From positions 248,001 through 312,000 of IMG/VR virus record IMGVR_UViG_3300034072_000758: DNA of 64,000 bases. One strand, written 5' to 3'. This document shows, in pieces, positions 104 to 53,823 of this stretch; within the stretch, counting starts at the first letter, position 1; each line of letters begins with the position of its first letter. The notes beneath the pieces are model-generated. The model saw only the letters and a list, made by a program, of their open reading frames with translations, had not been told where the DNA came from and searched no databases. Both the position numbers and the translations under genes were made by a program.

Positions 104-481
104 ATGGAAACTTTTACGCTTGACCTTCTTATCAAACTTATAACGAATGCTCCGAAGAAGTATCGCCGTTCACAACACAATGCTTACACGGCGGAGTTTG
201 TTTGCGGGACAAAAATTTCCTTTGAGTACAAAGCAAGCTTAAAGTACATGGACTTTCGTTGCTACAAAGCGAGATCATTCAGTATACGTGGTTCCGTGAG
301 CGCCAACACTAACCCACCACATTCAAATTATTCACAGTCTTTGAGCTTGGTTGGCTACCGCACATTTCCACTTACCCTACATTTTAGACCCTCTTCGTAT
401 TACTGTCACCTGATCGTCAATGGCAATCAAGAGAAATCCGAAGAAGACTTAGTTAAGTTCCTGTTGGTCAACTGTGGGTAG
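104..481 (+). CDS. Hypothetical protein, C-terminal acidic-hydrophobic tail family
   Basis: ORF after a TTGACT..TATCGT promoter-like element; ends SEEDLVKFLLVNCG. Confidence 0.6.
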   Translation: METFTLDLLIKLITNAPKKYRRSQHNAYTAEFVCGTKISFEYKASLKYMDFRCYKARSFSIRGSVSANTNPPHSNYSQSLSLVGYRTFPLTLHFRPSSYYCHLIVNGNQEKSEEDLVKFLLVNCG

Positions 482-517
482 CTTTGTAGAACTTGGGGGC
501 GATGCTCATGACCCCGA

Positions 518-751
518 TCAGTCCAGAAAGTTGTCGTTGCCATCGCCGATCCAGTCTGGGAGAACCCATTCCAGATGATGCTTGTTGGCGAGTTCGTACA
601 TGTATTCCAGAGCCGTAGGAATGGTCTCGAAGCCACGACGCGAAGCGACTGAATAATCATTCAGTTCATACGACGAACTGTCATATATTTTACAGATCGA
701 AAGCTTGGTGTGGTCCCCACCCGGAAAAATGATGTGATACATGACGGACAT
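518..751 (-). CDS. Hypothetical protein
   Basis: Tightly packed minus-strand operon with 754..1053 and 1050..1370. Confidence 0.6.
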   Translation of the reverse strand: MSVMYHIIFPGGDHTKLSICKIYDSSSYELNDYSVASRRGFETIPTALEYMYELANKHHLEWVLPDWIGDGNDNFLD

Positions 752-753
752 GG

Positions 754-1053
754 TTAGGGTTCCTCCACTTCATATTGGCCACGAATGACCTCTCGACTGA
801 TTTCATTCCAATGGCCACCAAAAAGCCAAGTGCTTGGCTTGGTCAATGACCGTGGGACTTTCACCCATTCGCGCACAATTTTGGTGACGACGACTTGATC
901 GTCCGAGTGTCTATACAGGGTCCGAGCACAGCCGGGGCAATGCTCGAAACGACTGGCGATGAAGAATCCTGTCAGGAACGTAGACTTGTCTGCCGAATCA
1001 AAACAGTGGCGACATACCGAACAGCGAGCGGTGTAATAGACGTTTAGGCTCAT
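754..1053 (-). CDS. Hypothetical protein with two CxxC pairs (possible zinc ribbon)
   Basis: CSVC...CPGC; 4-nt overlap with upstream gene. Confidence 0.6.
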   Translation of the reverse strand: MSLNVYYTARCSVCRHCFDSADKSTFLTGFFIASRFEHCPGCARTLYRHSDDQVVVTKIVREWVKVPRSLTKPSTWLFGGHWNEISREVIRGQYEVEEP

Positions 1054-1370
1054 TGGTTCGGATACTTCGCTGCCAGAATTGCCAGTTGGGCGCGCTCATG
1101 CTTTTCCCGATCAGCAGCGATCTTTTCTTCACGAGCGATGCGTTGCGCCATCTGTTCGTCCGTTTCGGGGACGTAGTGATATATGGACAGCCCGTAACAC
1201 TCGTTAGGGTCATAGCTCCCAGCGATGTCTTCATAGGAGATCATGGCGTTCGGATAGTCGGACTGATACTTTTGGAGATACTTGATCGCATCACCGATGC
1301 TACCGTCAAGATCGCCGGTAATCGTGGTGATGACTTCCTTGACCTTGCCGCGCACACGATTAACAGTCAT
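1050..1370 (-). CDS. Hypothetical protein
   Basis: AGGAG RBS and TTGACA-N17-TATGTT promoter upstream. Confidence 0.7.
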   Translation of the reverse strand: MTVNRVRGKVKEVITTITGDLDGSIGDAIKYLQKYQSDYPNAMISYEDIAGSYDPNECYGLSIYHYVPETDEQMAQRIAREEKIAADREKHERAQLAILAAKYPNQ

Positions 1371-1442
1371 AATATATCTCCTAGAATATTGATATGCTCA
1401 CAACATAACATGAAGCGTGATATTGTCAAGTCATGCCAAGAA

Positions 1443-1468
1443 AAAAGCCCCGGTTATCCGGGGCTTTT
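1443..1468. terminator. Intrinsic terminator, possibly bidirectional
   Basis: AAAAGCCCCGG-TTAT-CCGGGGCTTTT perfect stem flanked by A and T tracts. Confidence 0.85.
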
Positions 1469-13847: not shown

Positions 13848-13856
13848 GTGTATATT

Positions 13857-14234: not shown

Positions 14235-14251
14235 GATTATATTTAACAACT

Positions 14252-16605: not shown

Positions 16606-16959
16606 TTAGGATAGCAATGCCAGCATGGTCATGAAATGGTCGCGGAAGGCGCGGCCATTTTTATTGAACGTGATCGAACGCACCGATTTAATCTTAGAGT
16701 TCTTGATAAAAATATTGAGACGCCACCCGTTACCAACGATGCGGTATCGAGTGTAATAGTCTTGCATTCCAATATCCAAGACGCTCCAATGGGCTACGAT
16801 AAATTTGAACTCGTAGCCTTGAAACGATGCTGGGGCCGTAAACCAATCTACAACAAATGGAATGAATGATTTACACGTCTTGAATTTGGTATCACCCAAA
16901 TGATTGAGATCAAACAGATAGTTGTAGATTGCATCTTTCTGATCTTCGGTGAATGTCAT
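16606..16959 (-). CDS. Hypothetical protein, C-terminal tail family
   Basis: Ends FRDHFMTMLALLS. Confidence 0.6.
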   Translation of the reverse strand: MTFTEDQKDAIYNYLFDLNHLGDTKFKTCKSFIPFVVDWFTAPASFQGYEFKFIVAHWSVLDIGMQDYYTRYRIVGNGWRLNIFIKNSKIKSVRSITFNKNGRAFRDHFMTMLALLS

Positions 16960-17168
16960 TGAGGAACACAAACCGCATCGAGCGTCGTTTCGGTGATCGT
17001 GGTGTTACAGTAATCATCTGTGCTTGGATTCGTGCGACGGTCGCGGTAACGCCCTTGCTCCATGACCGCTTCTTGTTCGGCTCGCTCCTGTGACGTGAAG
17101 ACACCCACAAGCCATTGTGACATGACATCGTAATCGTGGTTGTCGGCGTATACCACCCAGACCTTCAT
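16956..17168 (-). CDS. Hypothetical protein
   Basis: MKVWVVY...GVFTSQERA, a common small phage protein pattern. Confidence 0.6.
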   Translation of the reverse strand: MKVWVVYADNHDYDVMSQWLVGVFTSQERAEQEAVMEQGRYRDRRTNPSTDDYCNTTITETTLDAVCVPQ

Positions 17169-17960: not shown

Positions 17961-18443
17961 ATGCCATTTTCAGATGAAGAAATACATGATATTCAGCAAT
18001 GGGATACGATTGGTTATATGATAACCGATGAATGGGAAAAGTTTGCGTCGAGTAAAACGTTTACAAGAGACGTTCAGTTAAGAATAGTCAATTCGGCACC
18101 AGAAAATATAGTCCGACTCCACAATCCACACGAAGATGTAATTCAATATTGTAATGCTTTGTTCGTGAGTAGAATTGATAGGCTAAGACCCTATTCATTT
18201 GATGATTTTGCGATCTTCGCGTATTTTCATACTTTCTCAGCCGAAAGGATATTTGATTTCTTATATGAGAGTACGATAACGCATATCACCGAATTTGTTA
18301 TGGAGCGTCTTGATCGAATGATAATGTTCGTTCATAATTATTTCGAAGGGAACCGTATTCCAGAATACGTATCCGTCATCAACACAATCTCGCGCTTCAT
18401 CAATAACGACGAAGACCGCATCAAGTTCAGGCTCATGGTATGA
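17961..18443 (+). CDS. Hypothetical protein, paralog 1 of tandem trio
   Basis: VQLRIV...IVRLHNPHEDVI; ends DEDRIKFRLMV. Confidence 0.65.
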   Translation: MPFSDEEIHDIQQWDTIGYMITDEWEKFASSKTFTRDVQLRIVNSAPENIVRLHNPHEDVIQYCNALFVSRIDRLRPYSFDDFAIFAYFHTFSAERIFDFLYESTITHITEFVMERLDRMIMFVHNYFEGNRIPEYVSVINTISRFINNDEDRIKFRLMV

Positions 18444-18982
18444 TTACCGAAACCGACATTCAATTCATCAGTCTGTTTGACCAAGTTTCTAATACAAGGT
18501 ATTCCGATTCGGGTACACTTGAGTTCTATCAGATGATCCGTGAAACAGAACTGAGCGAAGTATGTCAGGTTGTATTCGTATCTCGATACATCCCGCATAT
18601 CGTTTTCCTATACAATCCCTGTCCAGCGGTCATAGATTTATTCAATCGATACATACAAAGAGATTTCCCATCTTGGCTATCTGAACTGGTTAATATGGAA
18701 TCGTCATATGATCACTACAATCTGGTTGCTAATCTGATCGACACATTTTCGAATGATGCGTTCAAGCTATTGACCGATCAAACTAAAGAACTAATCACAA
18801 GCACCATTCGAGGCAACTTTCAACAGAACGCCTACGACATTGGACACGCGGTCCAGAGGAATTATGGCGGGCGAGTCTTTGGGGGACCGGAGGTTACGAC
18901 AGAAGAAATGACAAAGAACATATTGTCCTTGCTTACTGATGAAGAAGCCGTCAAATTCGTTTTGTATGGCAGCACCCGATGA
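18440..18982 (+). CDS. Hypothetical protein, paralog 2 of tandem trio
   Basis: CQVVFV...IVFLYNPCPAVI; ends DEEAVKFVLYGSTR. Confidence 0.65.
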   Translation: MITETDIQFISLFDQVSNTRYSDSGTLEFYQMIRETELSEVCQVVFVSRYIPHIVFLYNPCPAVIDLFNRYIQRDFPSWLSELVNMESSYDHYNLVANLIDTFSNDAFKLLTDQTKELITSTIRGNFQQNAYDIGHAVQRNYGGRVFGGPEVTTEEMTKNILSLLTDEEAVKFVLYGSTR

Positions 18983-19917
18983 CAGAGCTAGAATGTATCC
19001 GATTACTCATTGAAGATCAGACATTTCTCGAACGTTATAATGGCAACGCGGGTAACCGGTGTGACGGTGGTATGAAAAGCCGTATGCCGCTCTATATGGA
19101 GCACAATCCGTCCTTCCAACAGCCATTGGTCCAGCTATACATTATCTCGAAGAACTATGGTTATCGCTATTGTATTAAAACAGATGATCCGATTTTCAAT
19201 GAGGTGGTAAACCAGCGGGTTTGCTCCATCCTTGATAGGATTGATGCGAAAATGCGCGCGAATTTGGATCGATCTGTGGTTTATTCCATGTTCGATGCTA
19301 CTAGCGTCATATTCCGCTACCTATACCCGGATGTGTTGAAACGGCTGTTTAATGTTTATAAACTTCTCGATGATCAGCCCGATAACATCGGGGCAAAGCA
19401 ATTGTACGCAGAGCATATTCGTGTGGCAGAACAAGCACTGATTGATTTTGAGAACGGTAACCTTCAAGGCGTCCCAGATTTAGCATCTGAAAACGACAAG
19501 CTTGTAGTCAAACAATTCGCGTTGATGACCAACACTTACTTCAACACAGAAAATTTTGATCTTGATGATTTCGATCCACGCGCACAAAATATGTTCATTT
19601 TTTACCTGCCCTTTGTGGCTGGAAAAGTGAAGAACATTAAACAGCTTCACCGGGATTATCTGAACATATATGCCCTCACGCAAGCCTCTGTGATAGGCAC
19701 AGCGGAAGAACTCATTTATTGGCAAATTGATAATTTCGCAGGTAACTTTACACACATCTTGACTGATGAAACTAAGAAAGCCATCGAGAAGATTTATGAC
19801 ACGCCGTCATTTTTCAAATTGTGGTGTGAATGCGACTTCTCACATTACAATGTCGATGGCTTTATTAGTGCGTTTTACTCGGACGAGTTCAAAATGAAAA
19901 TGAAGCTTACTGCTTAG
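18979..19917 (+). CDS. Hypothetical protein, paralog 3 (apparently internally duplicated)
   Basis: VQLYII and AQNMFI units; ends DEFKMKMKLTA. Confidence 0.65.
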   Translation: MTELECIRLLIEDQTFLERYNGNAGNRCDGGMKSRMPLYMEHNPSFQQPLVQLYIISKNYGYRYCIKTDDPIFNEVVNQRVCSILDRIDAKMRANLDRSVVYSMFDATSVIFRYLYPDVLKRLFNVYKLLDDQPDNIGAKQLYAEHIRVAEQALIDFENGNLQGVPDLASENDKLVVKQFALMTNTYFNTENFDLDDFDPRAQNMFIFYLPFVAGKVKNIKQLHRDYLNIYALTQASVIGTAEELIYWQIDNFAGNFTHILTDETKKAIEKIYDTPSFFKLWCECDFSHYNVDGFISAFYSDEFKMKMKLTA

Positions 19918-21500: not shown

Positions 21501-21781
21501 TGTCGCAAAAAGAACCAAAAATCGTTGTGATACCGGCATCGGATAAAGCACAAAAAGCATACCAGAAGCTCAAGGGCCTGTGGGAAGCAGCCATGCTAAC
21601 TGTACCGGGATTTGCCCGCCGTGGTTTGGATTGTCAGCACATAAATGAAATCCCAGAATATTCGATAGACGCTGACCAAGTGCTGCGCGCTCAAGCTGCC
21701 AAGCACGAGGTAAACGGGTGTACACATCGTATGGCTATAAAGGATGGGGTTCTTCAACATGTCATCGCCATCCCGAAATAA
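21497..21781 (+). CDS. Hypothetical protein
   Basis: ATGA overlap. Confidence 0.6.
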   Translation: MMSQKEPKIVVIPASDKAQKAYQKLKGLWEAAMLTVPGFARRGLDCQHINEIPEYSIDADQVLRAQAAKHEVNGCTHRMAIKDGVLQHVIAIPK

Positions 21782-22139
21782 CATCACGGTCAATCGCACC
21801 CTGAGCGTAAGGTTTACCAGCAAACTGGTGAATCTGGTAAAGAAGTACATTGCTGCGAATGTAGATCGCCCATTATTGCTTCTTTCGACGGGGAAACAAA
21901 GTGTTATCTATTCGGTTGGTGATGATGGCAAAACATCTATAAAAGTTTATAGAAGTTCATTCGCTTCCGCTCAATCTAGTATAGTATATGAAGGGGGCTT
22001 TTTTCGCTGGCATTTAGGCCATGTCGAAGTGGCTAATCATTTTCGATTAGCTTTTATCGGCGGTCGTCTCCGTTACCTCTCTGACATCAACATGGGCGAA
22101 GACGAAATCCTGATGAAAGTTGTGTTATTTTTGTCATGA
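21759..22139 (+). CDS. Hypothetical protein, C-terminal tail family
   Basis: Ends GEDEILMKVVLFLS. Confidence 0.6.
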   Translation: MSSPSRNNITVNRTLSVRFTSKLVNLVKKYIAANVDRPLLLLSTGKQSVIYSVGDDGKTSIKVYRSSFASAQSSIVYEGGFFRWHLGHVEVANHFRLAFIGGRLRYLSDINMGEDEILMKVVLFLS

Positions 22140-22471
22140 GTGGTCAAGCATCAACCGAAGCAATGACACGCTTTTTGAACGCCTATTTAAAGGCGTTTGA
22201 GGATCGTCGTGAGTGGAACAATGAGAGCGGCTTTTACGATCTGGGTAAAACCCAAATCGTAGTCAGGCGCAGTAAGCATTTGGAGAAACATAATGATTAT
22301 GTGAAAGTAGGGCGCATGATCGACACCAAAACGTATACCAAATACATATTGTATATAAATGTAATATGGTCACAACATATTATGGTTCATTTCTTCCACG
22401 ATGGAAGCCATGTGGTCACTAGCCAAGATGAACCCGATGACGCTTTAGTTTCTCTTTTATTATTGATATAA
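22136..22471 (+). CDS. Hypothetical protein, C-terminal tail family
   Basis: Ends PDDALVSLLLLI. Confidence 0.6.
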   Translation: MSGQASTEAMTRFLNAYLKAFEDRREWNNESGFYDLGKTQIVVRRSKHLEKHNDYVKVGRMIDTKTYTKYILYINVIWSQHIMVHFFHDGSHVVTSQDEPDDALVSLLLLI

Positions 22472-22791
22472 TGACGCCAGAAGTTCAGACATTTAGTAAA
22501 CAAGCCGTGAAGAGTATATTGTCAGTTTTGACGATAGACGCTATTACCAGCCAGATTTCGCAAAAATATTGTTCGGTTTTTCAGGTAGGTAAAACTTTTG
22601 TCCGCATATCGAGAACTGTCCAATTCGTATCGCCGGACATTGTATTGTATGGACCAACCCCGTATTATTACATCATGTATATAATGTACGAAAAAGATTT
22701 TATACACTTTGAACGTGACGGAACGTATGCTATATTTTGTGAGTACGATCATGATGAATTTCTCATGACAACTCTATTGGCTATGGCGTGA
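22471..22791 (+). CDS. Hypothetical protein, C-terminal tail family
   Basis: Ends HDEFLMTTLLAMA. Confidence 0.6.
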   Translation: MTPEVQTFSKQAVKSILSVLTIDAITSQISQKYCSVFQVGKTFVRISRTVQFVSPDIVLYGPTPYYYIMYIMYEKDFIHFERDGTYAIFCEYDHDEFLMTTLLAMA

Positions 22792-23472
22792 ATGGGATAC
22801 TGTTCAAAATTCTACGGATCAATCAAAATCACTCCTGCGGTCGAACTGACCCCGGAGTTTTTGGCGCGATATAATACTCTGGACATTACTGAGCGTTGGC
22901 AGAAATGTCAAAGTCAAAACGGGATGTTGTCTGGTAACTATTGGAAGATTTCGGATGACGGTCAACGTCTCGTATGGATGACTGGTTATGAAAAATTCTA
23001 CTTATCAAACCTGTGGCTCGAAGAAGTCATGGATTTTCTTACCGGACTCGGCCACAAGATGAATGGTCGTTTTCGTGTGAGTGGCGAGGAACGTCCCGAT
23101 TTTTGGGGCATGATGGTTGTGGATGGTGTCGTCTTCACCATTGGTCAAGAACATCTTTATTTTGAAGAGGCTGAACGGTCTTTAGTACGTTTTGCGTCGG
23201 CGACGGTGGGGATGGGTCAACCATATAGGCGGACAGATCGCGTCCCATCGGCAGTTGATGAAAAGCTCGTTCAGTATATCGTTCGAGGCAAAGTCAACGA
23301 TCCATTTCCTATAGAAATTCTCGAAACAGAATACCACGAGATCACTAATCCACCACTCGCCAGATTGGTCGCCAAGATCGCCGAACGCGAAGGCAAAGAC
23401 GATGTTGCCGTGGGATTGATCACCAAATTCGGTCGCAACAGTCATAGGCATTATTCCATTTATGCTCCGTAG
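22792..23472 (+). CDS. Hypothetical phage protein
   Basis: MGY.SKF.GSI.ITP...EKFY...WL...GEE..DFW pattern. Confidence 0.65.
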   Translation: MGYCSKFYGSIKITPAVELTPEFLARYNTLDITERWQKCQSQNGMLSGNYWKISDDGQRLVWMTGYEKFYLSNLWLEEVMDFLTGLGHKMNGRFRVSGEERPDFWGMMVVDGVVFTIGQEHLYFEEAERSLVRFASATVGMGQPYRRTDRVPSAVDEKLVQYIVRGKVNDPFPIEILETEYHEITNPPLARLVAKIAEREGKDDVAVGLITKFGRNSHRHYSIYAP

Positions 23473-23785
23473 ATCACAACTCCCCACCGCTGTTCCCCCA
23501 GATCAAATGTTCAAGATCGTAAAAATGATCTGGGACAAGCGCGCTCCTCTGGCTATCCATGCTGGTAAAATGAAGGTGGCTGGGTTGGAGGTTTTCGTTT
23601 GGGAAGAAAAGCCTACGAACGATGACGAAAAAGCCTCTGTGTTCCAAGTCAAGTCAATCACTTGGGATGACCTTCATATCGACTTGGAATATACATCGAA
23701 TAAGGTGTATGGCTATCTTGCTGCCCGTTATCCGGGGAGCCTTGACGACGCATTGATCACACTCAACCTGAAACTGGCCGCATGA
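23462..23785 (+). CDS. Hypothetical protein, C-terminal tail family
   Basis: Ends LDDALITLNLKLAA. Confidence 0.6.
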   Translation: MLRRSQLPTAVPPDQMFKIVKMIWDKRAPLAIHAGKMKVAGLEVFVWEEKPTNDDEKASVFQVKSITWDDLHIDLEYTSNKVYGYLAARYPGSLDDALITLNLKLAA

Positions 23786-24159
23786 CGACCCGAAAATATA
23801 TATCCTACAAGTCTCAGCAAGAAATCGTTCAATACGCCCGAAAGCTGTTAAGAAATAAAACGACAAAGGATGCTAGTTACACCGGAGTTGCTGGCCAGAT
23901 TGTATACGATTATGGAAAAGCAATCTTGACAATAGGCTATTCCTTTGACGGTAGCACTCATGGTACTATTGGTGATGTCAGTAGCTTGCTATTAATGAAG
24001 TCTGCTACCGATGACATAGCGCATTGGTTTCTGGTTTGTATTGAAATAGAAGAAGAGTTTAATTTAGTTTCTTATCGTAGCAAGATGCTATACTACTCTG
24101 AACACCAAGACTTAAGTGAAGACGAAATATTGGTCAAGGTTGGTCTTTATTTAAATTGA
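23782..24159 (+). CDS. Hypothetical protein, C-terminal tail family
   Basis: Ends SEDEILVKVGLYLN. Confidence 0.6.
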   Translation: MTTRKYISYKSQQEIVQYARKLLRNKTTKDASYTGVAGQIVYDYGKAILTIGYSFDGSTHGTIGDVSSLLLMKSATDDIAHWFLVCIEIEEEFNLVSYRSKMLYYSEHQDLSEDEILVKVGLYLN

Positions 24160-32072: not shown

Positions 32073-32477
32073 CTAACAATATTCGGGGCGCTCTGGCTGA
32101 ACTCCAAAGCAAACCATGAGACAGAGATCGTCTTGGAATTTTTCAACGTCCCCAGAGAAATACCAGCGAGCGCCGCCACCATGAATGATATTCCCGGTTT
32201 GCCAGTCGCGGTTCGAGATCGCTTCGTAGAACATCCCCGCACCTTGGGTCTCGATCCGCCATTCTTCGCAGAACATTGCGGATAAGCTGTCGCCGAAATA
32301 CAGGACGGTGAATGGCTTGCCTATAAATTCGATCACACACTCGCGGTAATTTTTCGCACAAATGATCAGGTTGCGCGGTTGAGGGATAATCTTTTCGGAC
32401 AACTTCTCACCGGTCTCCACAACATAGATAGCGTCAAGATCGATGTTGACAGGCTTATTTTTTTCAAACTTTAACAT
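32073..32477 (-). CDS. Hypothetical protein, C-terminal tail family
   Basis: FQDDLCLMVCFG near the C-terminus. Confidence 0.55.
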   Translation of the reverse strand: MLKFEKNKPVNIDLDAIYVVETGEKLSEKIIPQPRNLIICAKNYRECVIEFIGKPFTVLYFGDSLSAMFCEEWRIETQGAGMFYEAISNRDWQTGNIIHGGGARWYFSGDVEKFQDDLCLMVCFGVQPERPEYC

Positions 32478-33769: not shown

Positions 33770-34207
33770 TTATTTTAATAACAAAGCCGTCATCAAAATA
33801 TCTCCGATACGTTTCTCGGAAATGAACCGATTATCTTCTGGCCATCTACGATCATAATCCCAGCGGTCAAAGAGATAAGCATGTGAATCTACAGCCTTCG
33901 TAGTATCGAATACATAATTTGCCACGTTGTCATATCGCGGAAGGCCATCATACAGATGAATTTCCTTTTGTTGTTCTGGGGTAATCGTACCCTCGAACAT
34001 GTATTCAACTTGAAAGTGTGGCCAAACGTTAAACTTGATCGTCAGATATACTTTGCCTTTGGGACCGAAACCCAAGTGCTCACGCTTGATGTCAATCCCG
34101 TAGGAACCACCTTCAAAATCAAATTTGATTCGTCTTGCCCCACTACCTAAAAAGATAGGTTCGGCCAGCGTGGCGAACGGTGCGACGTTATCAAATATTT
34201 TGTACAT
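33770..34207 (-). CDS. Hypothetical protein, C-terminal tail family
   Basis: Ends IGDILMTALLLK. Confidence 0.6.
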   Translation of the reverse strand: MYKIFDNVAPFATLAEPIFLGSGARRIKFDFEGGSYGIDIKREHLGFGPKGKVYLTIKFNVWPHFQVEYMFEGTITPEQQKEIHLYDGLPRYDNVANYVFDTTKAVDSHAYLFDRWDYDRRWPEDNRFISEKRIGDILMTALLLK

Positions 34208-35482: not shown

Positions 35483-35554
35483 ATTTTATACTCCCGATAT
35501 AAATGATATAGTTTCACCTTACCACATGTTTTCTGGTTGTCAATAAATACACCT

Positions 35555-36235: not shown

Positions 36236-36457
36236 ATGAAGTCTTGGAAAGACAGCAACAAAGAGTTTACGGATTACCTGAACGTTTATAACAAGGCTTC
36301 CGCCGAACTCAGCAGAAAGCAAAAGCGTTTCCTCGAAAACGTATTCGATGCCGGGGCGCTGGCTGATCTTCAAAACGAACAGCGCAAGTTCGACGCGGTG
36401 AACGAGGTCTATCTTCGTATGACCGAAGAACGCAAGCAGATGATGCTACATGGTTAG
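36236..36457 (+). CDS. Hypothetical helical protein
   Basis: AGGAG RBS. Confidence 0.6.
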   Translation: MKSWKDSNKEFTDYLNVYNKASAELSRKQKRFLENVFDAGALADLQNEQRKFDAVNEVYLRMTEERKQMMLHG

Positions 36458-36898
36458 GAAGTAAGTGAAGAGGTCTTCTTCATAGTCCTCTTCCAATACT
36501 CCATCAAAACGCTTGACTTCAAAATCATACAAATTGTTGCTATGGATACTTGCCAATATATCGGTTTGTTGGTTCGAAGAAAAGTTTTGTATCGAACATT
36601 TCAAGGTCAGCATTTCTTCGACTTTGGTTCCATCATATCGATAGTTGGGTTCGATTGATGATGAAGGTTTCGGTATGATGTTTGCCTTATACCCAAACAG
36701 AAACTTATCCGGGGCATAGAACCAGAACTGATAATGGCGTTTATGGTGAAAGTAGGTCACTGACATGCGGAAAGGTCGTGGGTGACCATGAACCACACGC
36801 CGCGCCGAATATGCGGTGAAGGTCGAATTTCGAGCGGCATGGAACGTATTCCGCTCCAATAGATGCCGCCAGATGTCATCATTCTTAAAAACGCTCAT
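36446..36898 (-). CDS. Hypothetical protein, C-terminal tail family
   Basis: Ends YEEDLFTYFLTM. Confidence 0.6.
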   Translation of the reverse strand: MSVFKNDDIWRHLLERNTFHAARNSTFTAYSARRVVHGHPRPFRMSVTYFHHKRHYQFWFYAPDKFLFGYKANIIPKPSSSIEPNYRYDGTKVEEMLTLKCSIQNFSSNQQTDILASIHSNNLYDFEVKRFDGVLEEDYEEDLFTYFLTM

Positions 36899-37383
36899 GA
36901 GAGCAAAGATAGCATAAACACATGATCTATCAAAGACTCTTCGGTCTTATCGACACATAATTTTGAATACATCGATTCAATTTCGAGACCATTATAATCT
37001 ACTTGTCTTGGAACTATACGGTTCTCGTCACTGACGACTCGCAAATGAAATGTTACCTTCGGCCCCGGCGTCTTGCTCATTCGGAATTTTATTACGAACC
37101 GCCCAAGTTGATGTACATGAGCGATGGCCACGATCCGGTGACCTTCATAAAACATTCTGACCTTGGCGCGGATACATTGTTCTATGTGTAGTTCCCCGGC
37201 AATTTCCGAGATAGTTGTCACACTATAGCGAGTGCCTAAGAGTGATCTACAGTAAGTAACCTTCCCGCGCATATCGATAAAATCGCTAAATCGATTGAAA
37301 AATCGAAGCCAAAGCTCCGCATCTTTCAGGGGAGAACCGTCAAGAACTTCGACGCTATTTAGCGGTATAGTCCACTTAGCCAT
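36895..37383 (-). CDS. Hypothetical protein, C-terminal tail family
   Basis: Start MAKWT; ends EESLIDHVFMLSLLS. Confidence 0.55.
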   Translation of the reverse strand: MAKWTIPLNSVEVLDGSPLKDAELWLRFFNRFSDFIDMRGKVTYCRSLLGTRYSVTTISEIAGELHIEQCIRAKVRMFYEGHRIVAIAHVHQLGRFVIKFRMSKTPGPKVTFHLRVVSDENRIVPRQVDYNGLEIESMYSKLCVDKTEESLIDHVFMLSLLS

Positions 37384-38086: not shown

Positions 38087-38097
38087 GTTACCCTTCC

Positions 38098-40090: not shown

Positions 40091-40528
40091 TCAGTCGAAA
40101 TAAAGTTGAAAAAGTAATTCGTCATCATGGCTGAAAGAAATCCGAAGTGGATTTATGTCACCAATGATATGCTGAAATATTGGGAAGCGCTCAGATATAT
40201 CAGCAATGATCTTGTCAGTCTTCGTTTGGTGATAAACCGATAGACGATTTCCATACCAAATACGATATAAGTTATCACCGCATCGCCACATAACAATTCG
40301 ATCAGATTCTCGAATTGTTACGCCGTTAATTTCTAACACACATGTAATTGGAAGCGTGTTGTTGGTAATTAAGTGTATTGTCTGATCAGCGAAAATGGCA
40401 GTCTTATAGTCAAGCGTCATCCCACCCGATGATATGATTGGCGGTCCCGGCGGAGAAGATTTTATTCCACCTCCGCCTCCACCGTGGCCAAAACCAATAA
40501 AATCACTAACGCTCAATTTTAAACCCAA
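40091..40528 (-). CDS. Hypothetical protein, C-terminal tail family
   Basis: Gly/Pro-rich N-terminus; ends HDDELLFQLYFD. Confidence 0.5.
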   Translation of the reverse strand: MGLKLSVSDFIGFGHGGGGGGIKSSPPGPPIISSGGMTLDYKTAIFADQTIHLITNNTLPITCVLEINGVTIRESDRIVMWRCGDNLYRIWYGNRLSVYHQTKTDKIIADISERFPIFQHIIGDINPLRISFSHDDELLFQLYFD

Positions 40529-41732: not shown

Positions 41733-42113
41733 TCATTTGTAAGTCAACAATAGGTAAGAAAGAAAATCCCAAGCGGATTCGTCATCTGCCTCCGTATTAT
41801 AAATGTATGTTAATTTATCCATTCGTAGAAAAACAGAATTTCCACCCAACACTGTATATTGTGGATTGAAACCAGAGACATCCCACCCAATTACTATATA
41901 GGCGAACTGTTTCCCGTTTATGATGATGTGTAGCGAAAGGCTATCCGCGCGCTGGAACTGGTATACAAGTATGGGATGTCCGTGATAATTGACATCCCAT
42001 ACATTTTGTTTGACCTCGACAAGGTTTTCCTTACTCAAGCGCCATAGGTCTTGAACAAAAAATACCCAAGCCTCTTGGAGATTATAATTTTTGCTGACTT
42101 GTAACATATACAC
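41733..42113 (-). CDS. Hypothetical protein, C-terminal tail family
   Basis: Ends DDESAWDFLSYLLLTYK. Confidence 0.55.
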   Translation of the reverse strand: MYMLQVSKNYNLQEAWVFFVQDLWRLSKENLVEVKQNVWDVNYHGHPILVYQFQRADSLSLHIIINGKQFAYIVIGWDVSGFNPQYTVLGGNSVFLRMDKLTYIYNTEADDESAWDFLSYLLLTYK

Positions 42114-43886: not shown

Positions 43887-44615
43887 ATGTCAGATACCGA
43901 GGTTAGCCCATCGCATTGGATGCTTGAGCCAGATGCTCGCATTTTCAAGCACATAGGCTATGATCTCAATCCTTCCAAAATGCGAATGATGATGGAGTTT
44001 GCCGAGAACTTCAACCAATCAAAATTCAATGATGGTAAGCATGTATCTGGGCGCGATCTGATCTTTAATTTTTTCAGCATACCCGATAAAAGCGTTCGTG
44101 CCGAGATTGGTGATGAATTGCTCAACTTTATCATTGGGCCGTGTGCCGAACGCTATAAGGTCAACAATGACCTGAAACTGTTCACCGATCTTGTCAAATT
44201 TCCTCTTCTATACACACTCGTGGAAGTCTTGTCTCTTGGGCTTCTTCCAACAAGTGCTCGTAAAGACTTCTATCCAAAATTCCTCGATCTGGGAGATACG
44301 TTCTCCCCGGAGATTCCCAATATCGAAATGGGGCCGTTGGGGCTTGTCGTCAATCCCGATCCGCTATGGGAAGCGCGAACACAGGTCTTCGGGCTTCTCG
44401 CCGAGGTATGCGCACCGATCTTTGATGAAGCTGGGTCCGGGGAGATTGCTGAGATCGCCCGCAAGATCATCGCTGATAACCCGGCGCAAGCGGACAAGGC
44501 CAGAGAGGATCAAAAGCTGGTGGGATGGTTCATGGGCCAAGTCATGAAACAGCTTAAGACCAAGACCGATCCTAACGCTGTTCGAGCGGTCGTAATCGAA
44601 GAGTTGTCCAAATGA
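43887..44615 (+). CDS. Protein with C-terminal GatB/YqeY tRNA-binding domain
   Basis: IIADNP......KLVGWFMGQVMK......DP..V. Confidence 0.75.
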   Translation: MSDTEVSPSHWMLEPDARIFKHIGYDLNPSKMRMMMEFAENFNQSKFNDGKHVSGRDLIFNFFSIPDKSVRAEIGDELLNFIIGPCAERYKVNNDLKLFTDLVKFPLLYTLVEVLSLGLLPTSARKDFYPKFLDLGDTFSPEIPNIEMGPLGLVVNPDPLWEARTQVFGLLAEVCAPIFDEAGSGEIAEIARKIIADNPAQADKAREDQKLVGWFMGQVMKQLKTKTDPNAVRAVVIEELSK

Positions 44616-44986
44616 AGATAGGCGATGTGGAAGCCGATACGGCGTTCTGGGTAAGATTTTGGAACGTTACTCCGACAGAGGGATACCTAAAACACTGGAA
44701 TGGTAGAACGATCCGCCTGATAAAAGCGCGTCACCAGATGCGAGACAGCATAGGGATGTATTCTTTCTATTATCGTCTCGATCTCCATATTTACGGGATG
44801 ATGCGTTGCTATGTATCTTGGAATACAAGGCGCGTGTTGCCCGGTGTTGATCATCCGTCAATTGAGTTTTATGGCCCGACGCCCATTGAGAAAAATTTCA
44901 AGAAATCTTGGATAAAATTCTACAAGGACTGTAATGTCAACGAAGTTCAAGACATCATGGTTATGGCTATGATGGGTATACTTTAA
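44612..44986 (+). CDS. Hypothetical protein, C-terminal tail family
   Basis: Ends EVQDIMVMAMMGIL. Confidence 0.6.
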   Translation: MKIGDVEADTAFWVRFWNVTPTEGYLKHWNGRTIRLIKARHQMRDSIGMYSFYYRLDLHIYGMMRCYVSWNTRRVLPGVDHPSIEFYGPTPIEKNFKKSWIKFYKDCNVNEVQDIMVMAMMGIL

Positions 44987-45762: not shown

Positions 45763-46076
45763 GCGACACCCGGAGCGGGGTTCTTATCCCGCTCCATATT
45801 CGTTCGGATGCGCCCACGTAGAATGTTTTTGGCGTGAGTGAAATATATGGTTTCGTTCTCAGTAAAGAAGTCGAAAGAGACAATCTCTTTTATGAGAGAA
45901 TGGTACGCCCATTTCCGCACCAAATCGTCTTCGATCTTAGATATACCGACGATCATGTTACTGTAGTGGTTCACGAAGCTGGCGATTTTTCGCACCCGTA
46001 CATCATCGGGCGCTTTTACCAGCATGTCGGCCAGATTGATCGCGGCTTGAGAATTTCCGAAAGTCGTGGGGTTCAT
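45759..46076 (-). CDS. Hypothetical protein
   Basis: Operonic ORF. Confidence 0.55.
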   Translation of the reverse strand: MNPTTFGNSQAAINLADMLVKAPDDVRVRKIASFVNHYSNMIVGISKIEDDLVRKWAYHSLIKEIVSFDFFTENETIYFTHAKNILRGRIRTNMERDKNPAPGVA

Positions 46077-46675
46077 ACGTGTAACATTACCTTCATTAGG
46101 TCTTCTTCTAGTTTGGTCATGTCACCACAAACAATCAAGGGTGTGTTGACAATAATACCATGCGGGGGTGATTTGCCCCAGCGCCCGATGCTTCCGTTTT
46201 CGGTCTCAACATATAGAACTTTGATCGGGATTTTAGAACGATTTGATGTTTGATAATGACTATAACCGGAATCGCGGAAATGCCTATCCCATTCATTCTC
46301 GCGTTGTCTTTGCTTATATTCTTCGTCCACATAATGAGTACGAAAAGACGGTCCCTTAAAGCTAGGGCGTGTTTCTATCACCGCATTTCCTTCGCGGTCA
46401 TATGTATGTTTAATTGCGAAATCTGGGTAATCTTTGATATGGTCTTCGATCCGGCGCAGAAAAGTTTCAAATGTGGTGAAATCGAAAGAGATTTTCTTCG
46501 CATCGATCCACTGACCAAAACTTATGTACGAGTCCTCGTCAGATAAGGATTTGTGTCTATTATATTTGGCTTCTTCGGCCTCAAACCAGACGCTCGAACG
46601 TTCTTCTTCACGATCAATGCTGGCCGTGAACCAGATAGTCAATAAGACAGCAACAACCCCTAGTGCGATCCACAT
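46073..46675 (-). CDS. Membrane-anchored protein, C-terminal tail family
   Basis: N-terminal TM; ends LEEDLMKVMLHV. Confidence 0.65.
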   Translation of the reverse strand: MWIALGVVAVLLTIWFTASIDREEERSSVWFEAEEAKYNRHKSLSDEDSYISFGQWIDAKKISFDFTTFETFLRRIEDHIKDYPDFAIKHTYDREGNAVIETRPSFKGPSFRTHYVDEEYKQRQRENEWDRHFRDSGYSHYQTSNRSKIPIKVLYVETENGSIGRWGKSPPHGIIVNTPLIVCGDMTKLEEDLMKVMLHV

Positions 46676-51523: not shown

Positions 51524-51561
51524 GACATATCCCTTTCCCTTTTAATATAGAGGGTAGCCGC

Positions 51562-52029
51562 TCAGGCGTCAACCTTTGTGAAATAGAAATCCAACATATT
51601 GAATTGAAATGCGTTGGCTTGCGGTATTGTCATATTTGGTGATTGTAATAAAATAATATTTGTTACTTTATAAATGATAGTTCTTACTCGATCATCCTCA
51701 CTCATTGTGGGGTTAGAATAAACACCCGCCTGTTGCTCTGCTAAAAAATTCCAAGCATCTATAATATGTTTCATACAAGAGAACGAATAGTATCTGAGTA
51801 AGTTTGGTTCAGATTCTAAATTGTTATGCCAGACGAAAAACGATCCTTTTTGATAAAAATCGACATCACCCGTGGGTATAGACTTATATCCGCTGGTAAT
51901 AGAAGTCAAAGCTTTTGTATGAATATTATCGGGATAGCTGTCGTACACCAGACCCAGAATATCGAGATACAGAAGGAGAAACCTTTGTAAATTGATCTCG
52001 TATTTTCGGTCCATTATGGCAACTAACAT
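51562..52029 (-). CDS. Hypothetical protein
   Basis: Operonic ORF. Confidence 0.55.
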   Translation of the reverse strand: MLVAIMDRKYEINLQRFLLLYLDILGLVYDSYPDNIHTKALTSITSGYKSIPTGDVDFYQKGSFFVWHNNLESEPNLLRYYSFSCMKHIIDAWNFLAEQQAGVYSNPTMSEDDRVRTIIYKVTNIILLQSPNMTIPQANAFQFNMLDFYFTKVDA

Positions 52030-52676
52030 TCAACTCCCGACAACGAAGGCTTCATGGCCTTCACCAGATTTACTCTAGTATTTAATTGCGAAATCATTCC
52101 ACGCACCATATTTCGGGTATATTTTTCGTCGGTATTGCTTTCGTCTTCAACCCACCAGAGATCGCGCGTATAAGACATGCGGTAAATCTCTTCTTTCTCG
52201 AATGACAGAAGAGGCTTATAGCGCACCATGTTGCGATGATAAGAAAAGGTTTTCATGTTCAGCGAATCATGTGGTTTTCCACGCATGAGAGACATGAATA
52301 CCTGTTCCACGTTGTCATTAAGATTATGAGCGGTGATAACCAGATTGGAACTCCCGCTAATCACACTCTCGACATACTTCCAGCGCTGATCATGCGCTTG
52401 GGCCTCAGTATTTGTTTTGGAGATATTACGCCCATGTCCGTGGTGAAATGTGATTCCGTGTTGTTCACAGAGCGTTTTAATACCCTGAGCTTCAACGTCA
52501 TCCGTATCTCGGATATGGTGTTGAAAATGAATTACTTCAAATGAAAATCCATTTCTTACCATCAAATCGAAGAGGAACATCGAGTCCACGCCGCCCGACA
52601 CCATCAGGTAAGTATGATCATACTTCTTGACGGTTTCCAACATATGTTGGATGACTTTGCGGATAGATGCTTGCAT
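52023..52676 (-). CDS. tilS: tRNA(Ile)-lysidine synthetase, catalytic domain only
   Basis: VSGGVDSM, HFQHHIR, TAHNLND..E, KPLL, WVEDESN....YTRN.VR. Confidence 0.85.
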   Translation of the reverse strand: MQASIRKVIQHMLETVKKYDHTYLMVSGGVDSMFLFDLMVRNGFSFEVIHFQHHIRDTDDVEAQGIKTLCEQHGITFHHGHGRNISKTNTEAQAHDQRWKYVESVISGSSNLVITAHNLNDNVEQVFMSLMRGKPHDSLNMKTFSYHRNMVRYKPLLSFEKEEIYRMSYTRDLWWVEDESNTDEKYTRNMVRGMISQLNTRVNLVKAMKPSLSGVEC

Positions 52677-53161
52677 TATTCCTCCTTAAGCGCTTCCTGA
52701 AAAGCTCTCGCTCGTAAGCGATACATATTATACAAGTATTCGGAAACGGTCAACAAAGTATCTTGTTGATCATGTTTGCCGATATAGTGTGTAAATAAGC
52801 TGAACTCCGACTCCAACAAAGCTTCGCGGAAGGCCGGGTTTTGTTCATAGCATTCGTTGTAGGCGCGCTCCATTAGGTCTTTGTACTGCTTGGAGTTTCG
52901 CTTGATGGGGTCTTCCAACCAATAGACCGTTTGATCCTCTTTCCAGACGTTTCCGCGCTCTTGTCCGACCTTGAAGGCTTCGAACGACTTCTCCATCGTG
53001 GCGATCTCGAATTGTTCCTCCAACGTCTTGAACTTCAAGCACTGAATAAACGTTTCCATCGACGTACATGGCATGTCATCCATAACGAAGGGATAGTTGT
53101 AAAGATTGGACAGTCTCTTACCGAGACCTTGCTGTTTAATGCCTAATTCTATAGATTTCAT
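52676..53161 (-). CDS. NADAR-like (T4 gp30.3-type) protein
   Basis: LSNLY.YPF.MD...C.S.E.FIQCLKF...QN..FR.ALL. Confidence 0.7.
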   Translation of the reverse strand: MKSIELGIKQQGLGKRLSNLYNYPFVMDDMPCTSMETFIQCLKFKTLEEQFEIATMEKSFEAFKVGQERGNVWKEDQTVYWLEDPIKRNSKQYKDLMERAYNECYEQNPAFREALLESEFSLFTHYIGKHDQQDTLLTVSEYLYNMYRLRARAFQEALKEE

Positions 53162-53240
53162 GACTCACCTCATTTTCTTTTCAAAGATAATAGCACATTT
53201 GAGACTTGAAGGCGAAATAGAAATCAATTAGGCTAGAAGT

Positions 53241-53555
53241 ATGATCAGCTATCACTATACCCATGCGCGGAACGCCGAAGCCATCTATGATGCGCTCTTG
53301 AAGAAGATCGAGTGGATTCCCCAACAGAATTTTGAAATGGAGCTTTTTGGGTATCCGAGCAAACTCAAAACATCACTCTGTAAAGAAATCATGATGATGT
53401 ATATCAGCCATGTCGAAACCGAAGACTTGGAAATTGTCTTCGGCGTCAAGTGGGCGGGGCTGGATAAAGTGAAATGTTACGCCATTTACATGTCGGCCAG
53501 ATCGGAGAAAGCCGCCGAAGACTGGCTAATGGACATCATGCTTTATTTAAATTGA
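53241..53555 (+). CDS. Hypothetical protein, C-terminal tail family
   Basis: Ends AEDWLMDIMLYLN. Confidence 0.6.
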   Translation: MISYHYTHARNAEAIYDALLKKIEWIPQQNFEMELFGYPSKLKTSLCKEIMMMYISHVETEDLEIVFGVKWAGLDKVKCYAIYMSARSEKAAEDWLMDIMLYLN

Positions 53556-53823
53556 CCGATTGCTCGATCCGAAGCATGAACATCATCAGGTCATCGTCAT
53601 CGAAGGTCACAACCAGTCCCTTGATAGAAGATGATGGGAAGTTCGTTTTTAACATTTCATCGAACGCCGGGTTCGATTTGAAGAGAGTGAAATTTTCACC
53701 GTTCCGTATAAGAACGTTGTCATACGCAAAATCGTAAGTGCTCGCGGTGTATGGTTTGGAGGACTTGACTTCCTCCATAACCATAATTTTCACACCGTCG
53801 ATTTCCATATAGGATTTTTTCAT
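53536..53823 (-). CDS. Hypothetical protein, C-terminal tail family
   Basis: FDDDDLMMFMLRI near the C-terminus. Confidence 0.6.
   Translation of the reverse strand: MKKSYMEIDGVKIMVMEEVKSSKPYTASTYDFAYDNVLIRNGENFTLFKSNPAFDEMLKTNFPSSSIKGLVVTFDDDDLMMFMLRIEQSVNLNKA

What the first reader, a model, noticed from the sequence alone, without database searches (positions are those of the whole stretch)
104..53823. About 20 unrelated small proteins share an acidic-then-hydrophobic C-terminal tail
Seen in the sequence: EEDLVKFLL (104), RDHFMTMLALLS (16606), EDRIKFRLMV (17961), EEAVKFVL (18440), DEFKMKMKL (18979), EDEILMKVVLFLS (21759), DDALVSLLLLI (22136), DEFLMTTLLAMA (22471), DDALITLNLKLAA (23462), EDEILVKVGLYLN (23782), DDLCLMVCF (32073), GDILMTALLLK (33770), EEDLFTYFLTM (36446), IDHVFMLSLLS (36895), DDELLFQLYFD (40091), WDFLSYLLLTYK (41733), QDIMVMAMMGIL (44612), EEDLMKVMLHV (46073), EDWLMDIMLYLN (53241), DDDLMMFMLRI (53536). 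The protein bodies look dissimilar, none of the recognisable enzymes has this tail, and members do not overlap with the N-terminal leader family. The tail is too short for a transmembrane anchor. Inference: it is a shared docking helix, making these interchangeable adaptors for one hub (phage scaffold, host chaperone or protease), or else a common degron or localisation tag for early proteins.
Basis: partly seen in the sequence, partly recalled or inferred. Interest (0 to 1): 0.82.

Follow-up and report, generated by a model that had tools for sequence, protein, structure and literature searches.

The report
Expanded small-protein family, shared C-terminal helix
A 517-kb uncultured jumbo phage devotes about one gene in eight to small, very divergent proteins that all end in the same acidic-then-hydrophobic helix, which most likely closes a shared small beta-sheet fold rather than acting as a detachable tag, although a common docking role is not excluded.

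Summary
All 20 tails are true C-termini of ORFs. The motif, [ED][ED]-x-L-M-x-[LF]-x-L-x(2-4)-end, marks about 87-98 ORFs of this 516,805-bp IMG/VR phage genome. At 6 bits or more, 78 hits are C-terminal and 2 are internal, and shuffled, reversed and foreign-genome controls give essentially none.

Selection acts on the protein, not the DNA. Third codon positions are free, and the near-invariant Leu uses all six codons.

The conserved unit is longer than the tail: a beta-strand, a turn, an acidic cap and an amphipathic helix, about 26 residues at fixed spacing. The bodies are mostly unalignable, but they are uniformly beta-rich and include paralog pairs and a 14-member subfamily. The one usable AlphaFold model (pLDDT 74) shows a six-strand sheet closed by the tail helix. 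Its fold matches nothing known.

Sinorhizobium phage Phosso has its own expansion of about 50 genes ending DAMLFKLxW. That tail aligns with this one in the same register (P 4e-6).

Best reading (confidence 0.55): a new, lineage-specifically expanded family in which the tail is a structural helix. A shared docking helix remains possible (0.22). A degron, a DNA element and chance are disfavoured.

The parts
104..481 (+). Family member, 125 aa, tail EEDLVKFLLVNCG
   Evidence: Translation. Family profile 15.6 bits, 3 aa from the end.
16606..16971 (-). Family member, about 117-121 aa, tail RDHFMTMLALLS
   Evidence: 8.1 bits.
17961..18443 (+). Family member, 160 aa, tail EDRIKFRLMV. First gene of a + strand run of three members.
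   Evidence: 5.4 bits. Full-length paralog of genome ORF 246178-246717, E 4.8e-7 over 140 aa.
18440..18982 (+). Weak member, 180 aa, tail EEAVKFVLYGSTR
   Evidence: Only 1.6 bits with the iterated profile.
18979..19917 (+). Doubtful member, 312 aa, tail DEFKMKMKLTA
   Evidence: -1.5 bits with the iterated profile.
21744..22139 (+). Family member, 131 aa, tail EDEILMKVVLFLS
   Evidence: 10.2 bits. Weakly similar to 23782-24159, E 8.7e-4. No homolog among 5.8 billion proteins.
22136..22471 (+). Family member, 111 aa, tail DDALVSLLLLI
   Evidence: 8.8 bits. Weak link to 22471-22791.
22471..22791 (+). Family member, 106 aa, tail DEFLMTTLLAMA
   Evidence: 9.8 bits.
23462..23785 (+). Family member, 107 aa, tail DDALITLNLKLAA
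   Evidence: 7.3 bits.
23782..24159 (+). Family member, 125 aa, tail EDEILVKVGLYLN
   Evidence: 6.4 bits with the first profile. Similar to 21744-22139 and to 46073-46675.
32073..32477 (-). Member of the 'W...YFxGD-xEQFExD' subfamily, 134 aa. The motif DDLCLMVCF is followed by 10 more residues.
   Evidence: alignment A3; hit P0007, E 1.4e-14. 10.2 bits.
33770..34207 (-). Family member, 145 aa, tail GDILMTALLLK
   Evidence: 9.9 bits.
36446..36898 (-). Family member, 150 aa, tail EEDLFTYFLTM
   Evidence: 7.7 bits.
36895..37383 (-). Family member, tail IDHVFMLSLLS. The open frame runs to 37749, but the likely start is ATG 37383 (162 aa).
   Evidence: 5.8 bits. The frame upstream of 37383 overlaps the better-scoring gene 37376-38134.
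40091..40528 (-). Family member, up to 145 aa, tail DDELLFQLYFD
   Evidence: 7.2 bits with the first profile. Similar to genome ORF 64301-64627, E about 2e-6.
41733..42113 (-). Family member, 126 aa, tail WDFLSYLLLTYK
   Evidence: 7.8 bits.
44612..44986 (+). Family member, 124 aa, tail QDIMVMAMMGIL
   Evidence: 10.3 bits.
46073..46675 (-). Member of the 'W...YFxGD-xEQFExD' subfamily, 200 aa, with an N-terminal membrane-span-like segment. Tail EEDLMKVMLHV.
   Evidence: A3; P0014. 12.4 bits. TM-like segment.
53241..53555 (+). Family member, 104 aa, tail EDWLMDIMLYLN
   Evidence: 10.1 bits. AlphaFold model with the family alignment: overall pLDDT 56, tail helix 89-103 at pLDDT about 85, preceded by strand 84-86.
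53536..53823 (-). Family member, 95 aa. The motif DDDLMMFMLRI is followed by 11 more residues.
   Evidence: 10.5 bits.

Best explanation
The tails mark one large, fast-diverging family of small proteins. Median length is 130 aa. There are about 87-98 copies, roughly 12% of the genes of this 517-kb T4-core jumbo phage and about 40% of the small genes at 150-215 kb.

What is conserved is the C-terminal closing module of a small beta-rich domain, in this order:
1. A beta-strand at -22 to -15 relative to the near-invariant Leu.
2. A Gly/Ser/Asp turn at -14/-13.
3. An acidic helix cap at -11, -10, -8 and -7.
4. A 12-residue amphipathic helix with hydrophobic positions -9, -5, -4, -2, -1, 0 and +2. 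It ends 2-4 residues after the Leu.

Inferred: the helix lies with its broad hydrophobic face (about 200 degrees of arc) on the sheet and holds the domain together, while the acids cap its N-terminus. The rest of each protein, the sheet surface and loops, is free to diverge, as expected of a binder or inhibitor scaffold used in host takeover or counter-defence.

Shown: the family, its size, protein-level selection, the strand-turn-helix module, and the helix prediction.

Inferred: packing of the helix on the sheet, one fold for all members, and the biological role.
For: - Position: 78 C-terminal versus 2 internal hits at 6 bits or more. 87 ORFs at 4 bits or more, 71 of them at 140-300 kb, with 24 adjacent same-strand pairs. 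Controls are clean.
- Protein-level selection: information sits at codon positions 1 and 2, with position 3 at about 0.05-0.2 bits at most motif codons (up to 0.45 at the Met and invariant-Leu codons). The invariant Leu is encoded by TTG 28, CTG 15, CTT 11, TTA 11, CTA 8 and CTC 5.
- Module longer than the tail: hydrophobic/basic alternation at -22 to -17 (0.51, 0.28, 0.50, 0.33, 0.59, 0.52, against about 0.35 in controls), and turn residues at 0.58 at -13.
- Bodies with the tail removed are richer in beta-formers than other small proteins of the same genome (34.4% versus 30.3%, p 1e-11) and poorer in helix-formers (p 7e-7).
- A continuum of relatedness: full-length paralog pairs (E 1.8e-10, 3.7e-7, 4.8e-7, 4.8e-5) and a 14-member subfamily alignable over about 55-95 aa.
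- 0 of 70 members has a Pfam domain, so the tail is not found bolted onto known folds.
- AlphaFold model of the 98-aa member 156914-157210 (genome coordinates): pLDDT 73.8, pTM 0.66, helix 4-10, six strands, then helix 83-97, which is the tail. The last 30 residues have pLDDT 82-91. The second model is poor overall but shows the same strand-then-helix ending.
- Sister family in phage Phosso: nearly invariant Trp54, Phe79, Phe88 and Leu90 tie the tail to an upstream helix and strand of one roughly 55-aa domain. The two tails align in the same register, P 3.8e-6, beyond all 150 column permutations.
Against: - With the tail removed, almost no pairwise similarity remains. 6 of 4753 family pairs reach 10 bits, against 3 of 9800 family-decoy pairs, and jackhmmer on bodies links nothing. 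'One fold for all' therefore rests on indirect evidence and on two models, only one of them usable.
- The tail is far better conserved than any other core element. It shows features that suggest more than packing: about 90% acidic residues at two positions and 48% Met at -4.
- The predicted fold has no significant neighbour: best Foldseek E 0.34 in PDB, best VIA Z 4.5.
Confidence: 0.55

Rival explanations
1. Shared docking module. The strand-turn-helix, or the helix alone, is an interface that brings about 90 different small bodies to one hub, such as the sliding clamp, a chaperone, a protease, or the packaging or ejection machinery. The proteins would then be interchangeable adaptors or cargo. 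This could coexist with a structural role for the helix.
For: - The tail is the only strongly conserved element, with near-invariant Leu, 85-91% acidic residues at -8 and -7, and an unusual Met preference at -4 (41 of 86) that the Phosso family shares.
- Its distance to the C-terminus is tightly constrained: 72 of 86 have 2-4 residues after the Leu.
- T4-type phages have a direct precedent. [quoted passage not shown]
- This phage's own family-B DNA polymerase ends AEDLFVFE.
Against: - The polymerase tail does not score with the family profile at all, whereas in T4 the clamp-binding tails resemble one another.
- The T4 epitope hangs on a flexible linker of variable length. Here the tail sits at fixed spacing from a conserved strand and is predicted as a confident helix within a model of pTM 0.66.
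- A 200-degree hydrophobic face would be hard to keep exposed in about 90 soluble proteins.
- About 12% of all genes competing for one site is hard to rationalise.
- No clamp was detected with the Pfam gp45 models, which is inconclusive.
Confidence: 0.22
2. A common C-terminal degron or timing tag, read by a host or phage protease in the manner of ssrA/ClpXP or Tsp, that clears early proteins.
For: C-terminal position. Some tails end in LAA, AMA or LSA-like residues.
Against: - The last residue is highly variable: S 17, L 10, A 10, K 8, V 8, T 6, I 6, Q 5, plus D, E, G, P and R. Only 2 of 87 tails end in AA.
- 13 of 86 carry 5-11 residues after the invariant Leu.
- The conserved part is the helix and the upstream strand, not the terminus.
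Confidence: 0.06
3. An in-plane membrane-binding amphipathic helix, like the C-terminal membrane-targeting sequences of MinD or FtsA, that localises the proteins to the inner membrane.
For: A short amphipathic helix at the extreme C-terminus. Four members also have an N-terminal membrane-span-like segment.
Against: - Known bacterial membrane-targeting helices are basic (from my own knowledge of MinD and FtsA). This one is flanked by four acidic positions and has no conserved basic residue, which is unfavourable on anionic membranes.
- The hydrophobic arc is wider than usual for surface binding.
Confidence: 0.05
4. The motif is a by-product of a nucleotide-level element at gene 3' ends (a promoter, ribosome-binding region, terminator or recombination site for the next gene), or of chance or composition.
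For: Genes are tightly packed and often overlap by ATGA. TGA stops are enriched in members, 54% versus 32%.
Against: - Third codon positions carry almost no information, and all six Leu codons are used at the invariant position.
- Shuffled and reversed controls give 0-3 hits.
- Promoter-like and terminator-like sites are not enriched around one array.
Confidence: 0.01

Closest known systems
The 'DAMLFKLxW' small-protein family of Sinorhizobium phage Phosso (undescribed; found here)
   Same: - Same kind of genome: a jumbo myovirus of 469 kb whose SbcC-like protein is 41.5% identical.
- About 50 small ORFs of 60-130 aa, in arrays.
- The C-terminal helix has the same register (Met at -4, Phe/Leu at -2, Leu at 0, hydrophobic at +2, end at +3, acids upstream) and is preceded by a beta-strand.
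- Profile-profile alignment falls in the identical register, P 3.8e-6.
- A few Phosso-type copies also occur in this genome and in PA5oct.
   Different: - The Phosso members are mutually alignable over a roughly 55-aa helix-strand-strand-helix core with an invariant Trp. The members here mostly are not.
- Each profile finds almost nothing in the other genome.
- Full-length profile comparison is not significant, P 0.08. Common descent is therefore likely but not proven.
Lineage-specific expansions of small-protein families in jumbo phages, for example the roughly 35-copy zinc ribbon of Bacillus phage G (PMC7824862)
   Same: One genome holds dozens of copies of one small module. The copies cluster, and the module is absent or low-copy in relatives.
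   Different: This expansion is larger, at about 90 copies. It has no recognisable known domain, and its bodies have diverged beyond sequence detection, so that only the C-terminal module identifies the family.
T4 sliding-clamp-binding C-terminal epitopes of gp43, gp55 and gp33 (PMC2988020)
   Same: An acidic plus hydrophobic peptide at the extreme C-terminus, shared by otherwise unrelated proteins of a T4-type phage and used to dock onto one hub.
   Different: - The T4 epitope is short, is tethered by a flexible linker and binds as a peptide, and three or four proteins carry it.
- Here the motif is a 14-residue predicted helix at fixed spacing from a strand, in about 90 proteins.
- This phage's own polymerase tail (AEDLFVFE) does not match the family profile.
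Helix-grip (SRPBCC/START-like) and PH-like small domains: a beta-sheet closed by a C-terminal helix
   Same: General architecture of the usable model: an antiparallel sheet followed by one long C-terminal helix. Several SRPBCC members appear among the weak structural matches. One language-model lead pointed to PH domains.
   Different: - All matches are at noise level: Z 3.4-4.5, Foldseek E above 0.06.
- No Pfam hit.
- The Atlas leads for three members disagree with one another.

Membership tests
Lineage-specific expanded paralog family (generic kind) | Many copies in one genome, clustered, often in tandem | tested here: met
   87 ORFs at 4 bits or more, plus about 10 sub-threshold partners. 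71 lie at 140-300 kb. 24 adjacent same-strand pairs.
Lineage-specific expanded paralog family (generic kind) | Members demonstrably homologous to one another | tested here: inconclusive
   The shared 26-residue module is highly significant, and several pairs and a 14-member subfamily are homologous over their full length. Most tail-trimmed bodies, however, show no detectable similarity.
Lineage-specific expanded paralog family (generic kind) | Absent or low-copy in related genomes | tested here: met
   0-1 C-terminal hits in each of Phosso, Atu_ph07 and PA5oct. The subfamily profile found only this genome's own proteins among 1.84 billion representatives.
T4-type sliding-clamp-binding C-terminal epitope | The motif resembles the C-terminus of the phage's own DNA polymerase, as the tails of gp43, gp55 and gp33 are 'highly similar' (PMC2988020) | tested here: not met
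   The polymerase (genome 384753-387524) ends AEDLFVFE and gives no hit with the family profile.
T4-type sliding-clamp-binding C-terminal epitope | A short epitope on a flexible linker of variable length | tested here: not met
   Fixed spacing to an upstream strand and turn. Predicted helix at pLDDT 82-91.
T4-type sliding-clamp-binding C-terminal epitope | Physical binding to the clamp | not testable with these tools
   No multimer prediction or binding assay was available. The clamp gene was not found with PF09116 or PF02916, which is inconclusive.
ssrA/ClpXP-type or Tsp-type C-terminal degron | A conserved terminal residue pattern at the free carboxyl end (for example LAA-COOH; from my own knowledge) | tested here: not met
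   16 different last residues. 2 of 87 end in AA. 13 of 86 have 5-11 residues after the invariant Leu.
Tail-anchor or transmembrane segment | About 18 or more uncharged hydrophobic residues | tested here: not met
   The hydrophobic stretch is at most 10-12 residues, with K/R/T common at -3 and -1.
PH-like or bacterial PH domains; SUKH/SMI1-KNR4 immunity domains | A match to the family's sequence models or to its fold | tested here: not met
   No Pfam hit in 20 + 70 scans. No PH or SUKH structure among the fold-search matches. The only pointer was an Atlas feature score of 0.68, below the stated lead threshold.
SRPBCC / helix-grip fold | Significant structural superposition of the sheet plus the C-terminal helix | tested here: inconclusive
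   CoxG, SLMO1, Aha1-C and ARO/CYC appear at Z 3.4-3.9. That is below the tool's stated noise level, and the model itself has pLDDT 74.

The most novel reading that the evidence does not exclude
The strand-turn-helix is a portable targeting module shared by about 90 otherwise unrelated small effectors, with a sister set of about 50 in phage Phosso. It would dock them onto a single phage or host hub: a phage-scale counterpart of effector translocation signals or of clamp 'tool-belt' motifs.
Probability: 0.2. Interest if true: 0.85.

Novelty: new member of a known kind. Interest (0 to 1): 0.55.

Why it matters
About one gene in eight of one of the largest complete phage genomes belongs to a family that no database describes: no Pfam or PHROG hit, and no homolog among billions of proteins. 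A related jumbo phage has expanded a sister family independently.

A single recognisable handle, the C-terminal module, turns roughly 90 'hypothetical' ORFs in one phage and 50 in another into one tractable question. One structure and one tail-deletion experiment would say whether jumbo phages build large repertoires of host-directed binders on a minimal sheet-plus-helix scaffold, or address many cargoes to one hub.

The motif also gives annotators a simple way to flag such genes in other huge phages.

Tried and rejected
- Pfam and PHROGs scans of the 20 window members, of 70 family members and of 10 Phosso members found nothing significant. The weak hits (DUF6559, Gal-bind_lectin, Trans_coact at E 0.065, an anti-restriction PHROG at E 0.037) are all below cut-off.
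- Homolog searches found little. 21744-22139 found only itself. The Phosso-like member at genome 418788-419123 found nothing. The subfamily profile against 1.84 billion representatives found only this genome's own proteins. A megablast and a tblastn against INPHARED phages found nothing for the family.
- No close kin of the phage turned up in IMG/VR when searched with the SbcC-like protein.
- Sequence search of PDB gave only noise, including hits to TEV-site tags (ENLYFQG) that mimic the subfamily's 'YFxG'.
- Fold searches of the usable model in PDB, in a wide VIA search, in AFDB clusters, in BFVD and in the ESM Atlas gave no significant neighbour.
- The first AlphaFold model, 53241-53555 with a 70-sequence family alignment, was too poor to search (pLDDT 56).
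- ESM Atlas feature searches gave three mutually inconsistent answers: PH domain at 0.68, Peptidase_A4 fragments at 0.94 with low recognition, and no features.
- The Shine-Dalgarno, promoter or terminator explanation was rejected by the codon-position information and by the site counts.
- Literature searches for the motif strings and for a described family found nothing.
- Models of gp33 and gp45 did not detect these proteins in the genome, so the clamp idea could not be pursued through the hub itself.

Full report
**What the window is.** The window is bases 248,001-312,000 of a single-contig, 516,805-bp virus record (45% G+C). IMG/VR classes it as having direct terminal repeats, and CheckV estimates it as 100% complete. 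It encodes an arginyl-tRNA synthetase, a helicase, SbcC/SbcD-like (gp46/47-type) nucleases, a NAPRTase and similar proteins. By the SbcC-like protein, its nearest named relatives are the jumbo myoviruses Sinorhizobium phage Phosso (41.5% identity), Agrobacterium phage Atu_ph07 (40.6%) and Pseudomonas phage PA5oct (38.6%). No close relative was found in IMG/VR.

**Checking the observation.** Each quoted coordinate is the ORF's low coordinate.
- 57 of the 70 best hits lie within 10 residues of a C-terminus, and 37 of those are new ORFs.
- Counting only ORFs outside the training set, at 2 bits or more there are 45 C-terminal and 20 internal hits.
- Shuffling the last 25 residues gives 0 and 17. 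Reversing the proteins gives 3 and 17.
- After four rounds of iteration there are 78 C-terminal and 2 internal hits at 6 bits or more, and 87 ORFs at 4 bits or more.
- The same profiles find 0-1 C-terminal hits in each of the complete genomes of Phosso, Atu_ph07 and PA5oct, so the procedure does not manufacture C-terminal hits.

Two entries (18440, 18979) are weak. Two (32073, 53536) carry 10-11 residues after the motif. ORF 36895-37749 probably starts at 37383.

**Protein signal or nucleotide signal?** I aligned the 86 tails on the near-invariant Leu. Information content is concentrated at codon positions 1 and 2 (up to 1.8 bits). Third positions carry about 0.05-0.2 bits at most motif codons, and up to 0.45 at the Met and invariant-Leu codons. 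The invariant Leu is written with all six codons. Promoter-like and terminator-like sites are not enriched around one array. The motif is therefore selected as protein.

**Anatomy.** The consensus is E-[EDK]-h-[ED]-[ED]-x-L-M-x-[LF]-x-L-x(2-4)-end.
- Leu is found at position 0 in 78 of 86 tails.
- Residues are acidic at -8 in 85% and at -7 in 91%.
- Met occupies -4 in 41 of 86.
- 72 of 86 tails have 2-4 residues after the invariant Leu. 13 have 5-11.
- The last residue is highly variable.

Without any gapping, the anchored profile also shows a hydrophobic/basic alternation at -22 to -17 and a Gly/Ser/Asp/Thr turn at -14/-13. Both are absent from other small proteins of the genome. The conserved unit is therefore a strand-turn-acidic cap-helix of about 26 residues. 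On a helical wheel the hydrophobic positions span about 200 degrees. That is my own geometric reading.

**Are the bodies unrelated?** Mostly yes by sequence.
- jackhmmer on bodies lacking the last 18 residues links nothing.
- Among tail-trimmed 90-residue bodies, 6 of 4,753 family pairs reach 10 bits, against 3 of 9,800 family-decoy pairs.

There are four lines of evidence against truly unrelated bodies.
- Full-length comparison finds paralog pairs similar over 100-140 residues (E 1.8e-10, 3.7e-7, 4.8e-7, 4.8e-5), and every partner also carries a tail.
- A subfamily of at least 14 members shares a Trp-containing strand, a 'YFxGD' strand and an 'EQFExD' cap. It includes the window genes 32073-32477 and 46073-46675.
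- Member bodies are compositionally distinct from other small proteins of the genome, with more beta-formers (p 1e-11), fewer helix-formers (p 7e-7) and more Tyr.
- None of 70 members has any Pfam domain, so the tail is never seen on a recognisable fold.

Four members add an N-terminal membrane-span-like segment.

**Structure.** AlphaFold on 53241-53555 with a 70-sequence family alignment gave a poor model (pLDDT 56). It did show a confident C-terminal helix (residues 89-103, pLDDT about 85) immediately after a strand. AlphaFold on the 98-residue subfamily member at genome 156914-157210 gave pLDDT 73.8 and pTM 0.66. That model has a short N-terminal helix, six beta-strands, and the tail as helix 83-97. 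The last 30 residues are the most confident part. Searches in PDB (Foldseek and a wide VIA search), AFDB clusters, BFVD and the ESM Atlas gave no significant match. The best values were E 0.34, Z 4.5, E 0.37, E 0.06 and TM 0.52. A few helix-grip (SRPBCC) proteins appear at Z 3.4-3.9, which is within noise. I could not read the coordinates, so burial of the helix is inferred, not measured.

**Relatives.** Phosso carries its own family of about 50 small ORFs ending ...D-A-M-L-F-K-L-x-[WF]-x. Thirty-two of them are linked by phmmer. They align over a helix-strand-strand-helix core with nearly invariant Trp54, Phe79, Phe88 and Leu90.
- Anchored 28-residue profiles of the two families align in exactly the same register. 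hhalign gives probability 87% and P 3.8e-6. The score is 14.3, against a maximum of 9.6 in 150 column permutations.
- Full-length profiles align tail to tail only, at P 0.08.
- A few Phosso-type copies exist in this genome (for example 418788-419123 and 35367-36032) and in PA5oct. None scores in Atu_ph07.
- The Phosso profile finds only Phosso-like sequences among 5.8 billion proteins, all unnamed.

The module therefore seems to be an old, low-copy element of this phage clade that was expanded independently in two lineages. Common descent of the two families is likely but not proven.

**Weighing the explanations.** The evidence best fits a fast-diverging, lineage-specifically expanded family whose C-terminal helix closes a small beta-sheet domain (confidence 0.55).

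The tail is conserved far beyond what the other core elements show, and the acidic pair and the Met preference hint at an interface. T4-type phages do use interchangeable 'hydrophobic and acidic C-termini' to dock gp43, gp55 and gp33 onto the sliding clamp (PMC2988020). Against that specific hub:
- This phage's polymerase ends AEDLFVFE and does not score with the family profile.
- The T4 epitope hangs on a flexible linker, whereas this tail is rigidly spaced from a strand.
- About 90 competitors for one site would be odd.

A degron that reads the free end is unlikely, given the variable termini. A membrane-binding helix is unlikely because the flank is acidic. A nucleotide element is refuted.

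**Novelty and limits.** No library, structure or paper searched describes either family. Large lineage-specific expansions are known in jumbo phages, for example the roughly 35 zinc ribbons of phage G (PMC7824862). I therefore file this as a new member of a known kind. It is notable for its size, about 12% of genes and about 40% of the small genes at 150-215 kb, and for the fact that only the C-terminal module survives divergence.

The main limits are these:
- My gene calls are crude.
- Only one structural model is usable.
- The single-fold claim and any function are inferred.
- The phage is uncultured, so its host and the timing of expression are unknown.

Noticed in passing
Genome (G000) 384753-387524 +, outside the window. 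Also G000 13420-14733 +, 34143-35345 - and 60657-62255 +.: The family-B DNA polymerase ends ...NFMAEDLFVFE. Three other large proteins end in short acidic-hydrophobic peptides: ...QLMNLNL, ...DDLLKFA and ...DDLLPVLV. These look like T4-type sliding-clamp-binding tails and are distinct from the family motif.
   Followed up: partly
Locus set L002-L025 (Sinorhizobium phage Phosso, PV764938.1), for example record 2896-3189, 96459-96707 and 175711-176025: About 50 small ORFs end in DAMLFKLxW and share a helix(W..eN)-strand-strand-helix core. All are annotated as hypothetical proteins, and there is no Pfam or PHROG match.
   Followed up: yes
window 47815-49383 +: A 522-aa protein combines a ParB N-terminal domain (residues 270-349) with a GNAT acetyltransferase domain (367-431). 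This is an unusual fusion.
   Followed up: no
window 30552-31724 +: A 390-aa protein has weak, sub-threshold matches to ART-PolyVal and DUF3990 (ADP-ribosyltransferase of polyvalent proteins) at its N-terminus.
   Followed up: no
window 3320-5035 +, 61957-63201 - and 24193-25170 +: The phage encodes an arginyl-tRNA synthetase, a nicotinate phosphoribosyltransferase and an NAD-dependent sugar epimerase/dehydratase.
   Followed up: no
All family members, genome-wide: TGA is the stop codon of 54% of members against 32% of other called genes. This fits the frequent ATGA stop/start overlaps in the arrays (for example 17961-18443 with 18440-18982, and 23462-23785 with 23782-24159).
   Followed up: partly
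window 36895-37749 - and 37376-38134 -: Two long open frames on the same strand overlap by about 370 bases. The family member most likely starts at ATG 37383, just inside the end of the upstream gene.
   Followed up: partly
Position -4 of the tail, in both this genome and Phosso: Methionine is strongly preferred at one helix position: 41 of 86 tails here, and nearly invariant in Phosso. No explanation was found.
   Followed up: no
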